Shown piece after piece: positions 1 to 28,604 of a DNA stretch of 28,604 nt; position 1 is the first letter of the stretch; every line of letters begins with the position of its first letter. The notes beneath the pieces were generated by a model. The model was not told the origin of the DNA and ran no database searches. It saw only the letters and a program-made list of their open reading frames with translations. This DNA comes from Macrostomum lignano (Eukaryota), in NCBI GenBank assembly GCA_002269645.1, contig NIVC01005012.1, positions 1 through 28,604 on the forward strand, read 5' to 3'. Both the position numbers and the translations under genes were made by a program.

Positions 1-3000
1 CGTGGTTCCGACTGTTGTGGTTCCGGCTGATTGGTTCCAGTTGGCGTGGTTCCGGCTGGCGTGGGTTCCGGCTGGCGTTGGTTCCGGCTGGCGTGGTTGG
101 CTGGCGTGGTTCCAGCCTGGTGTGGTTCCAGCCGTTGTGGTTCCGGCTGGCGTGGTTCCAGGCTGGTTGGTTCCGGCCGTTGTGGTTCCGGCTGGCGTGG
201 TTCCAGCTGGTGTGGTTCCGGCGTTGTGGTTCCAGCTGGTGTGGTTCCGGCTGTTGTGGTTCCGGCTGGTGTGGTTCCGGCTGGTGTGGTTCCGGCTGTT
301 GTGGTTCCGGCTGGCGTGGTTCCGGCTGTTGTGGTTCCGGCTGTTGTGGTCCGGCTGGTGTGGTTCCGGCTGTTGTGGTTCCGGCTGTGTGTGGTTCCGG
401 CTGGCGTGTTCGGTTGGTGTGGTTCCAGCTGGTGTTGGTTCCGGCTGGTGTGGTTCCGGCTGGCGTTGGTTCGGCTGGTGTGGTTCCGGCTGGTGTGGTT
501 CGACCGTTGTGGTCCCGCTGGTGTGGTTCCGGCTGGTGTGGTTCCGACCGTTGTGGTTCCAGCTGGTGTTGTTCCAGCTGGTGTGGTTCCGGCTGGCGTG
601 GTTCCGGCTGGCGTGGTTCCGGCTGGCGTGGTTCCAGCTGGTGTGGTTCCAGCCGTTGTGGTTCCGGCTGGCGTGGTTCCAGCTGGTGTGGTTCCGGCCG
701 TATTTCCGGCTGCGTGGTTTCAGCTGGTGTGGTTCCAGCCGCTGTGGTTCCAGCTGGTGTGGTTCCGGCTCTTGTGGTTCCGGCTGGTGTGGTTCCGGCT
801 GGAGTGGTTCCGGCTGGTGTGCGGTTCCAGCTGGTGTGGTTCTGGCTGCGTGTGGTTCCGGCTGGCGTGGTTACAGCTGGTGTGGTTCCGGCTGTTGTGG
901 TTCCGGCTTTGTGGTTCCCGCTGGTGTGGTTCCGGCTGGTGTGGTTCCGACCGTTGTGGTGCGGCTGGTGTGGTTCCGGCTGGTGTGGTTCCGGCCGGTG
1001 TGGTTCCGGCTGTTGTGGTTCCGGCTGGCGTGGTTCCGGTTGGTGTGGTTCCAGCTGGTGTGGTTCCGGCTGGTGTGGTTCCGGCTGGCGTGGTTCCAGC
1101 TGGTGTGGTTTCGGCTGGTGTGGTTCCGGCTGTTGTGGTTCCCGCTGGTGTGGTTCCGACTGGTGTGGTTCCGACCGTTGTGGTTCCAGCTGGTGTGGTT
1201 CCGGCTGGTGTGGTTCCAGCTGGTGTGGTTCCGGCTGGTGTGGTTCGGCTGGTGTGGTTCCCGCTGGTGTGGTTCCGACCGTTGTGGTTCCGACTGGTGT
1301 GGTTCCAGCTGGTGTGGTTCCGGCTGGCGTGGTTCCGGCTGGCGTGGTTCGGCCGTTGTGGTTCAGCTGGTGTGGTTATAGCCGTTGTGGTTCCGGCTGT
1401 TGTGGTTCCAGCTGGTGTGGTTCAGCCGTTGTGGTTCCGGCTGTTGTGGTTCCAGCTGGTGTGGTTCCGGCCGTTGTGGTTCCAGCTGGTGTGGTTCCGG
1501 CTGTTGTGGTTTCCGGCTGGTGTGGTTCCGGCTGGCGTTGTTCCGGCTGGTTGTGGTTCCGGCTGGTGTGGTTCCAGCTGGTGTGGTTCCGGCTGGTGTG
1601 GTTCCGGCTGGCGTTGTTCCAGTTGGCGTGGTTCCGGCTGGCGTGGTTCCAGTTGGCGTGGTTCTGGCTGGTGTGGTTCCAGCTGGTGTGGTTCCGGCTG
1701 GTGTGGTTCCAGCTGTTGTGGTTCCCGCTGGTGTGTGGTTCGGCTGGTGTGCGTTCCGACCGTTGTGGTTGCAGCTGGTTGTGGTTCCGGCCGTTGTGGT
1801 TCCAGCTGGTGTAGTTCCAGCCGTTGTGGTTCCAGCTGGTGTGGTTCGGCTGTTGTGGTTCCGGCTGTTGTCGTTGCGGCTGGTGTGGTTCCGGCTGGCG
1901 TGCGTTCCGGCCGTTCGTTGTGGTTCCGGCTGGCGTGGTTTCAGCTGGTGTGGTTCCAGCGTTGTGGTTCCAGCTGGTGTGGTTCCGGCTGTTGTGGTTC
2001 GGCTGGTGTGGTTCGGCTGGAGTGGTTCCGGCTGGTGTGGTTCCAGCTGGTGTGGTTTCGGCTGGTGTGCGTTCCGGCTGTTGTGGTTCCCGCTGGTGTG
2101 TTCCGGCTGTGTGGTTCCGCCGTTGTGGTTCCAGCTGGTGTTGTTCCGGCTGGTGTGGTTCCAGCTGGTGTGGTTCCGGCTGGTGTGGTTCCGGCTGGTG
2201 TGGTTCCGGCTGGTGTGGTTCCGACCGTTGTGGTTCGACTGGTGTGGTTCCAGCTGGTGTGGTTCCGGCTGGCGTGGTTCCGGCTGGCGTGGTTCCGGCC
2301 GTTGTGGTTCCAGCTGGTGTGGTTCCAGCCGTTGTGGTTCGGCCGTTGTGGTTCCAGCTGGTGTGGTCCGGCCGTTGTGGTTCGGCTGGCGTGGTTTCAG
2401 CTGGTGTGGTTCCGGCCGTTGTGGTTCCAGCTGGTGTGGTTCCGGCTGTTGTGTTCCGGCTGGTGTGGTTCCGACTGGAGTGGTTCGGCTGGTGTGGTTC
2501 CGGCTGGTGTGGTTCCAGCTGGTGTGGTTCGGCTGGTGTGGTTCCGGCTGGCGTGGTTCAGTTGGCGTGTTCCGGCTGGTGTGGTTCCGGCTGGTGTGGA
2601 TCCGGCTGTTGTGGTTCCGGCTGTTGTGGTTGCGGCTGGTGTGGTTCCGGCTGGCGTGGTTACAGCTGTGTGGTTCCGGCTTTTGTGGTTCCGGCTGTTG
2701 TGGTCCCACTGGGTGGTTCCGGCTGGTGTGGTTCCAGCTGGCGTGGTTACAGCTGGTGTGGTTCCGGCTGTTGTGGTTCCGGCTGTTGTGGTTCCCGCTG
2801 GTGTGGTTCCGGCTGGTGTGGTTCCGACCGTTGTGGTTGCGGCTGGTGTGGTTCCGGCTGGTGTGGTTCCGGTGTTTGGTTCCGCTGGTGTGGTTCCGGC
2901 TGGCGTGGTTCCGGCCGTTGTGGTTCCAGCTGGTGTGGTTATAGCCGTTGTGGTTCCGGCTGTGTGGTTCCAGCTGGTGTGGTTCCAGCCGTTGTGGTTC

Positions 3001-28604: not shown

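What the first reader, a model, noticed from the sequence alone, without database searches (positions are those of the whole stretch)
1..28604. Giant (>8,200 aa) SCO-spondin/mucin hybrid with 12 discoidin-like modules: candidate new mucus or adhesive scaffold protein
Seen: three VWD-C8-TIL assemblies, 5-6 LDLa, 12 discoidin-like domains, and two large Thr-rich repeat arrays in one collinear gene. Established: D1-D2-D3 followed by an LDLa cluster and F5/8C is the SCO-spondin layout. Long PTS regions are the hallmark of gel-forming mucins. VWD plus discoidin combinations occur in invertebrate secreted proteins such as hemolectin and the sea-star adhesive Sfp1. Inference: this combination, with this discoidin copy number and more than 4,400 aa of PTS repeats, is unusual and suggests a self-cross-linking (lectin plus O-glycan) mucus or glue protein. 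The minisatellite-filled introns and GC3-rich exons remind me of flatworm (Macrostomum-like) genomes, but that assignment is only a guess.
Basis: partly seen in the sequence, partly recalled or inferred. Interest (0 to 1): 0.75.

Follow-up and report, generated by a model that had tools for sequence, protein, structure and literature searches.

The report
Giant flatworm mucin-like gene, draft sequence
The window is most of a Macrostomum lignano gene for a giant secreted mucin-like protein that is already in databases, has a limpet mucus relative, and reads as broken here probably only because the draft sequence has many small deletions.

Summary
On the minus strand lie three VWD-C8-TIL assemblies, five LDLa plus one LDLa-like module, and 12 beta-sandwich modules (11 clear, 1 divergent). 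Two Thr-rich arrays follow, of about 1,560 and 2,860 aa. Everything is collinear and runs off both window ends. The Macrostomum guess is right: GenBank PAA71036.1 and UniProt A0A1I8IQU4 (5,222 aa) are this gene or its homeologue. Fifteen of 18 peptides of an unnamed MUC5B-like protein in the published M. lignano footprint proteome map to the window.

Three qualifications apply:
- The window has no intact reading frame. There are about 28 frameshifts in the N-terminal exons, 20 of 40 PTS1 units are 113 nt instead of 114, and PTS2 drifts between frames. Nearly all changes are deletions with few substitutions, so I read them as consensus errors rather than decay.
- The modules match no Pfam model. 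They are discoidin/CBM32-like only by predicted fold (pLDDT 87, TM about 0.6).
- The architecture is not new. Patella vulgata XP_055959230.1 is collinear with it. Its N-terminal domain counts nearly match P-vulgata_3, a SCO-spondin-like protein of limpet pedal mucus (TIL x3 against x2).

Verdict: an uncharacterised member of a spiralian mucus-protein family. The lectin cross-linking idea is untested.

The parts
26477..28441 (-). D1 assembly. VWD1 runs from '[14 protein letters not shown]' at 28400-28441 to 'GLCGNYDG' at 27314-27355, in three exons. C8-1 is at about 26996-27272 and TIL-1 at about 26488-26705. The two introns inside VWD1 hold a 21-bp repeat (27985-28271) and a 12-bp repeat (27365-27579).
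   Evidence: (Pfam VWD). Peptides [18 protein letters not shown] and [11 protein letters not shown] map here. Several 1-nt deletions break the frame.
23664..26194 (-). D2 assembly plus D'. VWD2 is at 25334-26194 and is interrupted by an intron at 25422-25693. C8-2 is at about 25082-25330 and is deletion-dense. The TIL-2/D' Cys-rich exon is at 23664-24072. The intron at 24073-25082 holds a 29-bp x31 minisatellite.
   Evidence: The exon 23758-24072 is 100% identical to A0A1I8IQU4. Peptide [11 protein letters not shown] maps here, and TCLVTG/SSFR maps across a +1 insertion.
21860..23394 (-). D3 assembly. A Cys-rich pre-module is at 23250-23394. VWD3 is at about 22745-23107 and is deletion-dense. 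C8-3 is at 22259-22510 and TIL-3 at 21957-22139.
   Evidence: Pfam C8, TIL and VWD. Peptide [13 protein letters not shown] maps across a 1-nt deletion at 22744.
20683..21850 (-). Cluster of five LDLa modules: 21717-21824, 21506-21628, 21175-21300, 20976-21101 and 20757-20850. They are separated by introns of 73-205 nt.
   Evidence: Pfam Ldl_recept_a. The splicing is confirmed by GenBank PAA71036.1 (P0021). Peptide [15 protein letters not shown] maps here.
20155..20604 (-). Module M1, the first galactose-binding-domain-like module (C...GCF).
   Evidence: HMM E 6e-42. Peptide [22 protein letters not shown] maps here.
15647..20046 (-). Seven tandem copies of a 657-bp (219-aa) unit. Each unit is a 153-aa module followed by a 66-aa T/P/E-rich linker. 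The first copy crosses a 1-nt deletion at about 19795.
   Evidence: Six peptides (for example [17 protein letters not shown] and [11 protein letters not shown]) each map 6-7 times.
14924..15508 (-). Divergent module M9 (15092-15508) and an LDLa-like Cys module (14924-15037). A ~75-nt intron follows at about 14850-14925.
   Evidence: Peptide [10 protein letters not shown] maps here.
13869..14777 (-). Modules M10 (14349-14777) and M11 (13869-14300), in one ORF that runs into PTS1.
   Evidence: HMM E 2e-34 and 1e-37.
9133..13820 (-). PTS1: 40 units of [38 protein letters not shown]. Only three unit types occur: 113 nt (x20), 114 nt with CCT (x15) and 114 nt with CCC (x5).
   Evidence: The in-frame version is present in A0A1I8IQU4.
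8649..9077 (-). Module M12, a very divergent 143-aa module (CPKVMKM...EIKMC) between the two PTS arrays.
   Evidence: weak HMM match, E 0.002, covering positions 8-144, with the terminal Cys pair kept. It lies in the ORF 7332-10004 that joins PTS1 to PTS2 in frame.
1..8579 (-). PTS2: about 570 copies of a 15-bp unit reading TTPAG. It runs off the window. The Thr-rich frame is nearly stop-free but changes phase at about 7400 and about 3500, then repeatedly.
   Evidence: T 46%, A 18%, G 18%, P 14%.

Best explanation
The window is about 28.6 kb of a Macrostomum lignano gene. It lacks the first exon or exons and the 3' end. The gene encodes a giant secreted, polymerising, heavily O-glycosylated mucin-like protein. 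It belongs to a spiralian family whose N-terminus resembles the first third of SCO-spondin.

Shown here:
- Identity with the M. lignano entries PAA71036.1 and A0A1I8IQU4.
- Expression and secretion, through peptides in material the worms leave on glass.
- The domain order D1-D2-D'D3, LDLa x5, 11 modules (with one LDLa-like module among them), PTS1, one more module, PTS2.
- Collinearity with a limpet protein.

Inferred from what is established for VWF and the gel-forming mucins:
- The D assemblies drive Ca2+/pH-dependent packing and disulfide multimerisation in secretory granules.
- The roughly 4,400 aa of TTPAG-type and T/E/P-type repeats carry dense O-glycans and form the hydrated gel.
- The 12 disulfide-stapled galactose-binding-domain-like modules, strung on short PTS linkers, act as globular knots. 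They would give non-covalent cross-links (glycan binding or homotypic), much as CysD domains do in vertebrate mucins.

The many frame breaks in the window are most likely deletion-biased consensus errors of a draft long-read assembly, not biology.

The gland of origin is unknown. I favour general locomotory or epidermal mucus over the duo-gland adhesive itself.
For: Species and gene:
- P0002, P0021 and P0035 are M. lignano proteins containing identical stretches.
- The frameshift-aware alignment to A0A1I8IQU4 matches 1,198 codons, of which 1,155 are identical.

Expression and secretion:
- 15 of 18 tryptic peptides of an unnamed 2,969-aa 'MUC5B / mucin-17-like / hemolectin' transcript map to the window. 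They span D1, D2, D3, LDLa, M1, M2 and M9.
- The transcript is listed in Dataset S2 (footprints) of PMC6410801.

One gene:
- The same peptide set belongs to one database entry.
- PAA71036.1 splices LDLa2-5 to M1 and M2.
- ORF 13686-14885 joins M10 and M11 to PTS1, and ORF 7332-10004 joins PTS1, M12 and PTS2.

Domains: Pfam results.

Module fold:
- AlphaFold2 gives pLDDT 86.9 and pTM 0.82.
- All top Foldseek PDB hits are CBM32, F5/8C (factor V C2, neuropilin b1, DDR2, CASPR2), DOC or IFT25, with TMq 0.55-0.61.
- The first and last Cys are conserved.

Family:
- Patella XP_055959230.1 is collinear (31% identity over 1,285 aa, E 7e-165). It has at least 12 of the same modules with PTS linkers.
- Its Pfam counts are VWD x3, C8 x2, TIL x3 and LDLa x5. 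P-vulgata_3 has VWD x3, C8 x2, TIL x2 and LDLa x5. P-vulgata_3 was found in all three limpet pedal mucus types and is expressed in pedal-sole glands.
- The chiton protein XP_064614628.1 has 7 modules.

Artefact reading of the frame breaks:
- Nearly all are 1-nt deletions and only 2 are insertions. Residues between the gaps remain identical.
- In PTS1 the missing base sits exactly at the only variable (T/C) site of otherwise identical units.
- Peptides span the indels.
Against: - No in situ, RNAi or glycan data exist for this gene, so the function is inferred.
- The footprint sample also contains tubulin and other cellular proteins, so presence there does not prove a role in adhesion or even active secretion.
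- No peptide or transcript evidence covers M10 to PTS2 (the stored files are truncated).
- The C-terminus is outside the window, so tail-to-tail dimerisation (CTCK) cannot be checked.
- The modules have no detectable sequence similarity to any lectin, and TM of about 0.6 is only moderate.
- The deletion density in two patches (about 30% of bases missing) is extreme for a consensus error.
- One peptide of the same protein group, YILDLATGKPTPQCK, is found neither in the window nor in A0A1I8IQU4. The expressed copy may therefore be a homeologue rather than this locus.
Confidence: 0.82

Rival explanations
1. This particular locus is a decaying homeologue (pseudogene) of the expressed gene. The frameshifts and small deletions would then be real, a by-product of the recent genome duplication in M. 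lignano.
For: - About 28 frameshifts and two patches with dozens of small deletions sit in conserved VWD and C8 exons.
- There is a stop at 4465-4467 in the Thr frame of PTS2.
- Half of the PTS1 units are out of frame.
- At least three differently broken genomic versions exist in databases: P0002, P0035 and the window.
- One peptide (YILDLATGKPTPQCK) is not placed in this copy.
Against: - Matched codons are 96% identical, and most mismatches abut indels, so there is no substitution load to go with the indel load.
- The changes are almost exclusively deletions.
- The 4.9-kb module ORF (14852-19795) and several exons are flawless.
- The PTS1 deletion falls at the single polymorphic site, which is typical of a consensus caller.
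Confidence: 0.1
2. The protein is a dedicated component of the duo-gland adhesive, a third adhesive protein beside Mlig-ap1 and Mlig-ap2, rather than general body mucus.
For: - It was detected in adhesive footprints.
- Its plan (VWD/TIL/LDLa N-terminus followed by about 220-aa tandem repeats) parallels the description of Mlig-ap2.
- P-vulgata_3, the limpet protein whose domain counts match its likely orthologue, is in adhesive pedal mucus.
Against: - Knock-down of ap1 or ap2 alone abolishes adhesion, and the authors named only those two.
- The footprint lists contain obvious non-adhesive contaminants.
- None of its peptides occurs in the stored part of the amputated-tail dataset (that file is truncated).
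- Its pI of 5.6 and its peptides differ from Mlig-ap2, which has pI 10.1.
Confidence: 0.2
3. The gene is the flatworm orthologue of SCO-spondin proper, a Reissner-fibre-type neural glycoprotein. The PTS arrays would be a lineage-specific insertion.
For: - The best named hits of the D3-LDLa region are SCO-spondins of octopus and birds.
- The VWD x3, LDLa cluster, discoidin-like order is that of the first third of SCO-spondin (my knowledge).
Against: - There are 4,400 aa of PTS and 12 modules but no TSR or SCOR repeats within 28 kb.
- The protein is found in external secretions.
- The limpet protein P-vulgata_3 is expressed in foot glands.
- The C-terminus is unseen, so TSRs cannot be excluded.
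Confidence: 0.05
4. The D-domain exons and the giant repeat exons belong to two adjacent genes.
For: - No transcript or peptide evidence links M9 to M10, PTS1 or PTS2.
- The database model A0A1I8IQU4 skips M9-M11.
Against: - Peptides from D1 through M9 belong to one transcript entry.
- ORFs are continuous across M11/PTS1 and across PTS1/M12/PTS2.
- There is a canonical ~75-nt intron between the LDLa-like module and M10.
- The limpet protein has the same order in one model.
Confidence: 0.04

Closest known systems
Patella vulgata XP_055959230.1 ('mucin-2-like', 4,007 aa), probably the full-length form of P-vulgata_3, the SCO-spondin-like pedal-mucus protein of Kang et al. 2020 (PMC7333891)
   Same: - It is collinear with the M. 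lignano protein: VWD-C8-TIL x3, LDLa x5, first module, PTS, LDLa-like modules, then many modules (C-x4-GM ... LRP ... ACF) separated by PTS linkers.
- Identity is 31% over 1,285 aa.
- P-vulgata_3 is secreted in mucus and expressed in foot glands.
   Different: - The limpet model has no long homogeneous PTS arrays like the TTPAG x570 array.
- It has an N-terminal EMI/EGF-like region that lies outside this window.
- That P-vulgata_3 equals XP_055959230.1 rests only on near-matching domain counts (TIL x3 against x2) and on a primer that encodes 'CDGAN', found in the protein. The link is not proven.
Gel-forming mucins (MUC2/MUC5AC/MUC5B) and von Willebrand factor
   Same: - N-terminal D1-D2-D'D3 assemblies.
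- Very long Thr/Pro-rich tandem repeats interrupted by small globular Cys-stapled domains.
- The authors' own annotation of the transcript is 'MUC5B, e=1e-112'.
   Different: - The LDLa cluster and the galactose-binding-domain-like modules are absent from vertebrate mucins, whose interrupting domains are CysD.
- The C-terminal D4/VWC/CTCK part could not be examined.
SCO-spondin
   Same: Three VWD assemblies followed by an LDLa cluster and a discoidin-type domain. It gives the best named BLAST-type hits.
   Different: SCO-spondin has about 25 TSR/SCOR repeats and no PTS arrays. None of its TSRs is seen here. SCO-spondin is neural, whereas this protein is in external secretions.
Mlig-ap2, the M. 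lignano adhesion protein 2 (Wunderer et al. 2019)
   Same: Same animal. It has an N-terminal VWD/TIL/C8/LDLa region followed by dozens of 221-255-aa tandem repeats. It is O-glycosylated and occurs in footprints.
   Different: - It is a different protein: different peptides, pI 10.1 against 5.6, and repeat lengths of 255 and 221 aa against 219 aa.
- It was listed as a separate entry in the same datasets.
- A profile of the modules did not retrieve it.
Hemolectin/hemocytin and sea-star Sfp1
   Same: Both combine VWD-C8-TIL with discoidin or galactose-binding lectin domains in secreted invertebrate proteins (my knowledge; for Sfp1).
   Different: Their lectin domains are canonical and detectable by Pfam. 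They have no giant PTS arrays, and no collinearity was shown.

Membership tests
Gel-forming mucin (sensu Lang et al. 2007) | N-terminal VWD-C8-TIL assemblies (D1, D2, D'D3) | tested here: met
   Pfam VWD, C8 and TIL on window frames and on the clean copy. There are three CGNYDG motifs.
Gel-forming mucin (sensu Lang et al. 2007) | Long central Pro/Thr/Ser-rich tandem-repeat domain | tested here: met
   PTS1 has 40 units of 38 aa. PTS2 has about 570 units of 5 aa with T 46% in a nearly stop-free frame. O-glycosylation itself was not tested.
Gel-forming mucin (sensu Lang et al. 2007) | C-terminal D4 / VWC / cystine-knot for dimerisation | not testable with these tools
   The gene runs off the window at position 1, and the database models also end inside PTS2.
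SCO-spondin | VWD x3 followed by an LDLa cluster | tested here: met
   The best named hits are SCO-spondins.
SCO-spondin | Array of thrombospondin type 1 and SCOR repeats, and a CTCK | tested here: inconclusive
   None is seen in 28.6 kb. The 3' part of the gene is missing.
F5/8 type C (discoidin) domain, Pfam PF00754 | Match to the family profile | tested here: not met
   No hit at E <= 1 for five modules. There is also no hit in the limpet or chiton proteins.
F5/8 type C (discoidin) domain, Pfam PF00754 | Galactose-binding-domain-like beta-sandwich fold | tested here: met
   AF2 gives pLDDT 86.9. All top Foldseek hits are CBM32, F5/8C or DOC, with TMq 0.55-0.61 and E down to 1e-5.
F5/8 type C (discoidin) domain, Pfam PF00754 | Cys at the first and last positions (terminal disulfide) | tested here: met
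   C1 is invariant and C152 is at least 90% conserved across 16 flatworm and mollusc modules. The bond itself was not tested.
F5/8 type C (discoidin) domain, Pfam PF00754 | Ligand (sugar, lipid or collagen) binding by the loop 'spikes' | not testable with these tools
   This needs a glycan array or binding assay with a recombinant module.
Spiralian SCO-spondin-like mucus protein (P-vulgata_3 type) | VWD x3, C8, TIL and LDLa x5 in one secreted mucus protein | tested here: met
   Peptides occur in worm footprints.
Spiralian SCO-spondin-like mucus protein (P-vulgata_3 type) | Expression in external mucus or adhesive glands | not tested
   I found no in situ data for the M. lignano gene.
Mlig-ap2 | Identity with the published adhesive protein (peptides; 255-aa and 221-aa repeats; C-terminal TSP1) | tested here: not met
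   It is a separate database entry with different peptides and pI. The repeat here is 219 aa.

The most novel reading that the evidence does not exclude
The roughly 145-aa 'C-x4-GM ... LRP ... (A/G)CF' module may be an undescribed, highly divergent branch of the discoidin/CBM32 superfamily. So far it is seen only in flatworm and mollusc mucus proteins, plus small single-module proteins of unidentified origin. It would work as a glycan-binding cross-linker that lets these giant mucins gel with their own O-glycans. That would be an invertebrate counterpart of the vertebrate CysD domain and a possible basis of reversible mucus adhesion.
Probability: 0.3. Interest if true: 0.55.

Novelty: new member of a known kind. 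Interest (0 to 1): 0.32.

Why it matters
Macrostomum lignano is the genetic model for temporary bioadhesion, yet only Mlig-ap1 and Mlig-ap2 have been studied. This gene encodes a third giant glycoprotein that worms leave on surfaces. It appears to be the flatworm counterpart of a limpet pedal-mucus protein, so RNAi in the worm could give the first functional test of this spiralian mucus-protein family. The repeated beta-sandwich module is absent from Pfam and could be registered as a new domain family. The window is also a warning for annotation. Deletion-biased consensus errors in GC3-rich exons and in near-identical repeats make an expressed gene look like a pseudogene.

Tried and rejected
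- Pfam on five modules gave nothing meaningful.
- The second homology search, with linkers included, was swamped by low-complexity words and returned only P0002.
- The third, with a 16-module profile, found only small unnamed single-module proteins. Their contigs are short and give no taxon.
- An exact look-up of ORF 13683-14759 in public assemblies found nothing.
- Identity with Mlig-ap2 was considered and rejected.
- tblastn alone could not follow the D-domain exons because of the frameshifts. I therefore wrote a frameshift- and intron-aware alignment.
- A search for peptides of M10 and M11 in the published datasets found none.
- Searches for the gene identifier or for flatworm SCO-spondin-like mucus proteins in the literature found no dedicated study.
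- There are no tRNA or Rfam matches in the window.
- Long ORFs on the plus strand and in the other minus-strand frames of the 15-bp array are by-products of a repeat that lacks stops in most frames. They are not genes.
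Full report
**Orientation and layout**

The gene lies on the minus strand. The plus strand is strongly T-rich over positions 1-14000 (AT skew down to -0.86), and all Cys-rich domain fragments read on the minus strand. Read 5' to 3', from high to low coordinates, the window holds:
- small GC3-rich exons (28441 to 20683);
- a nearly continuous coding stretch from 20715 to position 1, interrupted by one ~75-nt intron at about 14850-14925.

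The gene is cut at both ends. Upstream of the first VWD exon there is only intron-like sequence, and the 15-bp array runs off at position 1.

**Domain inventory**

- Three VWD domains are marked by GLCGNYDG at 27314-27355, 25374-25415 and 22798-22827. Each is followed by C8 and TIL.
- Pfam recognises VWD, C8, TIL and LDLa on stop-masked frame translations.
- On the clean database copy, which starts inside VWD1, Pfam gives VWD x2, C8 x3, TIL x3 and LDLa x4.
- Five LDLa modules lie between 21824 and 20757. Their splicing is confirmed by GenBank PAA71036.1. A sixth, LDLa-like Cys module is at 14924-15037.

Twelve modules of about 145 aa begin with Cys and, in most, end with GCF or ACF (M9 and M12 vary):
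- M1 at 20155-20604;
- seven copies of a 219-aa unit at 15647-20046;
- M9 at 15092-15508, M10 at 14349-14777 and M11 at 13869-14300;
- M12 at 8649-9077, very divergent, which I found only when translating the junction of the two arrays.

The two PTS arrays are:
- PTS1 (9133-13820), 40 units of 38 aa;
- PTS2 (1-8579), about 570 units of 15 bp reading TTPAG, with T 46%, A 18%, G 18% and P 14%.

Five large introns are filled with tandem repeats:
- 21-bp at 27985-28271;
- 12-bp at 27365-27579;
- (CAGA)n at 26229-26442;
- 21-bp at 25467-25686;
- 29-bp x31 at 24137-25018.

**Species and identity**

- The first homology search returned UniProt A0A1I8FDM7 of Macrostomum lignano. This is a garbled 629-aa model built from pieces of this gene in mixed frames.
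- An exhaustive profile search with the modules then found PAA71036.1 (BOX15_Mlig029570g1, partial).
- Through its cluster it also found A0A1I8IQU4, a 5,222-aa 'VWFD domain-containing protein' of M. lignano.
- A0A1I8IQU4 has the same order: D1 (partial), D2, D'D3, LDLa x5, M1, at least nine M2 copies, PTS1, PTS2.
- A frameshift- and intron-aware alignment of its first 1,290 aa to the window matches 1,198 codons, 1,155 of them identical.

**Expression and secretion**

I searched the supplementary mass-spectrometry tables of Wunderer et al. 2019 (PMC6410801) with tryptic peptides predicted from the modules. This hit an unnamed entry in Dataset S2, the adhesive-footprint proteome. The entry is an 8,908-nt '5UTR_CDS' transcript of 2,969 aa and pI 5.6. 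The authors annotated it as VWD, MUC5B (1e-112), Crassostrea 'mucin-17-like' and hemolectin.

Of its 18 listed peptides:
- 12 map exactly to the window;
- 3 map across an indel, split codon or local difference;
- 2 (QAAFADQVSGSDHCQLALLTGDSFK and FHISAQNVPCGSK) are in A0A1I8IQU4, at places where the window is deletion-ridden;
- 1 (YILDLATGKPTPQCK) I could not place.

The mapped peptides cover D1, D2, D3, LDLa4, M1, M2 and M9. The N-terminal domains and the modules are therefore parts of one product. The same lists contain tubulin and other cellular proteins, so the sample is not pure secretion. I found no peptides for M10 or M11, but the stored files are truncated.

**The reading frame is broken, probably by the assembly**

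- Peptide [13 protein letters not shown] spans a missing G at 22744.
- Peptide TCLVTGSSFR spans an extra T at 26126.
- ECASECPTTC reads [10 protein letters not shown] in the window, through one insertion plus one deletion 7 nt apart.
- The first M2 copy loses a C at about 19795.
- The alignment to A0A1I8IQU4 needs about 28 frameshifts. Almost all are single missing bases and only two are insertions.
- Two patches, 25187-25334 (start of C8-2) and 22777-23097 (VWD3), lack roughly a third of their bases in many small gaps. The residues between the gaps stay identical.
- In PTS1 the 40 units fall into only three types, identical except at one position: CCT (15 units), CCC (5 units) or the base missing (20 units). 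The 'deletion' sits exactly on the only polymorphic site, as expected if a consensus caller faced mixed T/C reads.
- In PTS2 the Thr-rich frame is almost free of stops while the other two frames are not. Its phase changes at about 7400 and about 3500 and then repeatedly.

Deletion bias, lack of accompanying substitutions and flawless neighbouring stretches all point to consensus error. The flawless stretches include the 4.9-kb module ORF and exon 23758-24072 at 100% identity. The errors concentrate in the GC3-rich exons (GC3 0.79-0.86) and in near-identical repeats. A true pseudogenised homeologue cannot be excluded without accurate reads, and I give it about 10%.

**What the modules are**

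- Pfam finds nothing, including in the mollusc homologues.
- The five distinct window modules are only 12-24% identical to one another. They share C1, GM at positions 6-7, an LRP motif and the terminal (G/A)CF.
- AlphaFold2 with these five sequences gave pLDDT 76.7. With a 16-sequence flatworm and mollusc alignment it gave pLDDT 86.9 and pTM 0.82.
- Both models hit only galactose-binding-domain-like folds in the PDB, with TMq 0.55-0.61.
- The hits were CBM32 modules, the C-terminal domain of a GH29 fucosidase, factor V C2, neuropilin b1, the DDR2 and CASPR2 discoidin domains, and DOC/APC10 and IFT25.

'Discoidin-like' is therefore justified at the level of fold and terminal Cys pair, but not of sequence family. 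Ligand binding is unknown.

**Relatives elsewhere**

The module profile retrieved:
- 'mucin-2-like' XP_064614628.1 of the chiton Liolophura sinensis, with seven modules alternating with PTS;
- Patella vulgata proteins including XP_055959230.1 (4,007 aa).

The limpet protein has a signal peptide and an EMI/EGF-like start. It then has VWD x3, C8 x2, TIL x3 and LDLa x5, a first module, PTS, two LDLa-like modules and at least 12 modules with PTS linkers. It aligns collinearly with the M. lignano protein over 1,285 aa at 31% identity (E 7e-165), and again over the modules.

Kang et al. 2020 (PMC7333891) described P-vulgata_3, a partial 1,604-aa 'SCO-spondin-like' protein with vWFD x3, C8 x2, TIL x2 and LDLrA x5. 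It was present in all three limpet pedal mucus types and expressed in pedal-sole glands. The near-matching domain counts, and an ISH primer encoding 'CDGAN' that occurs in XP_055959230.1, suggest they are the same gene. I could not prove it.

A SCO-spondin-like putative mucin ('Spondin1') is also reported from snail mucus (PMC10475054). The architecture is therefore a conserved spiralian one.

**Not Mlig-ap2**

The published adhesive protein has a similar plan: VWD/TIL/C8/LDLa, then 21 x 255-aa and 25 x 221-aa repeats, then TSP1. It is a separate entry in the same datasets, with different peptides and pI 10.1. The module profile did not find it.

**Mechanism (inferred)**

By analogy with VWF and the gel-forming mucins, I infer the following:
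- The D assemblies pack and disulfide-link the protein into multimers in acidic, Ca2+-rich granules.
- The LDLa cluster adds Ca2+-dependent contacts.
- The PTS arrays carry O-glycans and hold water.
- The twelve stapled beta-sandwich modules act as cross-linking knots between the glycosylated stretches.

I favour a role in general gliding or protective mucus over the duo-gland adhesive proper. RNAi of ap1 or ap2 alone abolishes adhesion, and the footprint samples are contaminated. This rests on weak evidence.

**Verdict**

The object is an expressed, deposited but unstudied M. lignano gene, a new member of a known kind (spiralian SCO-spondin-like mucus proteins). Its unannotated repeated module is the only moderately novel element. 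The window itself is draft-quality sequence whose frame breaks should not be read as biology without re-sequencing.

Noticed in passing
window 24137-25018, 25467-25686, 26229-26442, 27365-27579, 27985-28271: Five of the larger introns of the D-domain region are each filled with a different tandem repeat: 29-bp x31, 21-bp x10, (CAGA)54, 12-bp x18 and 21-bp x14. The short introns of the LDLa region (73-205 nt) have none.
   Followed up: partly
window 9197-13737: The 40 PTS1 units are 100% identical except at one site, which is T (15 units), C (5 units) or missing (20 units). Such perfect homogeneity, with a gap at the only variable site, looks like collapsed polishing of a repeat rather than real sequence.
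   Followed up: yes
window 22777-23097 and 25187-25334: Two patches lack about a third of the bases, in many 1-15-nt gaps, relative to A0A1I8IQU4. The remaining residues are identical. This is far denser than the single-base deletions elsewhere, and I have no specific cause for it.
   Followed up: partly
window 8649-9077: A 12th, very divergent module (CPKVMKM...EIKMC) sits between the two PTS arrays. It has KM instead of the GM motif and matches the module HMM only weakly.
   Followed up: partly
not in window (peptide of PMC6410801 Dataset S2): Peptide YILDLATGKPTPQCK belongs to the same protein group. It is found neither in the window nor in A0A1I8IQU4. It may lie in the missing 5' exons or come from a homeologue with a different D1.
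   Followed up: partly
P0035 (A0A1I8IQU4) versus window 13869-20046: The database copy has at least nine M2 units where the window has seven. Its model jumps from an M2 unit straight to PTS1, omitting M9, the LDLa-like module, M10 and M11. Either copy number differs between assemblies or homeologues, or one assembly is collapsed.
   Followed up: no
P0025 (A0A1I8GJ02): M. lignano has a paralogue with the same plan: D2-D3, LDLa x5, then modules. Its peptides, from a 2,625-aa transcript, are also in the footprint dataset. The worm therefore secretes at least two proteins of this family.
   Followed up: partly
P0024, P0028, P0030, P0032, P0050-P0052; loci L001, L002: Small (170-200 aa), Lys-rich, apparently secreted single-module proteins ending in TTT occur on short metagenome and Logan contigs of unknown organisms. 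They match the module profile at E 1e-20 to 1e-30, better than the mollusc mucins do.
   Followed up: partly
window 1-8600, both strands: The 15-bp repeat lacks stop codons in nearly all six frames, so mechanical ORF lists show 1,000-1,700-aa ORFs on both strands. Only the Thr-rich minus-strand frame is consistently stop-free.
   Followed up: yes
window 20155-28441 versus 13869-20604: Codon usage differs sharply within one gene. GC3 is 0.79-0.86 in the Cys-rich N-terminal exons but 0.38-0.56 in the modules.
   Followed up: no
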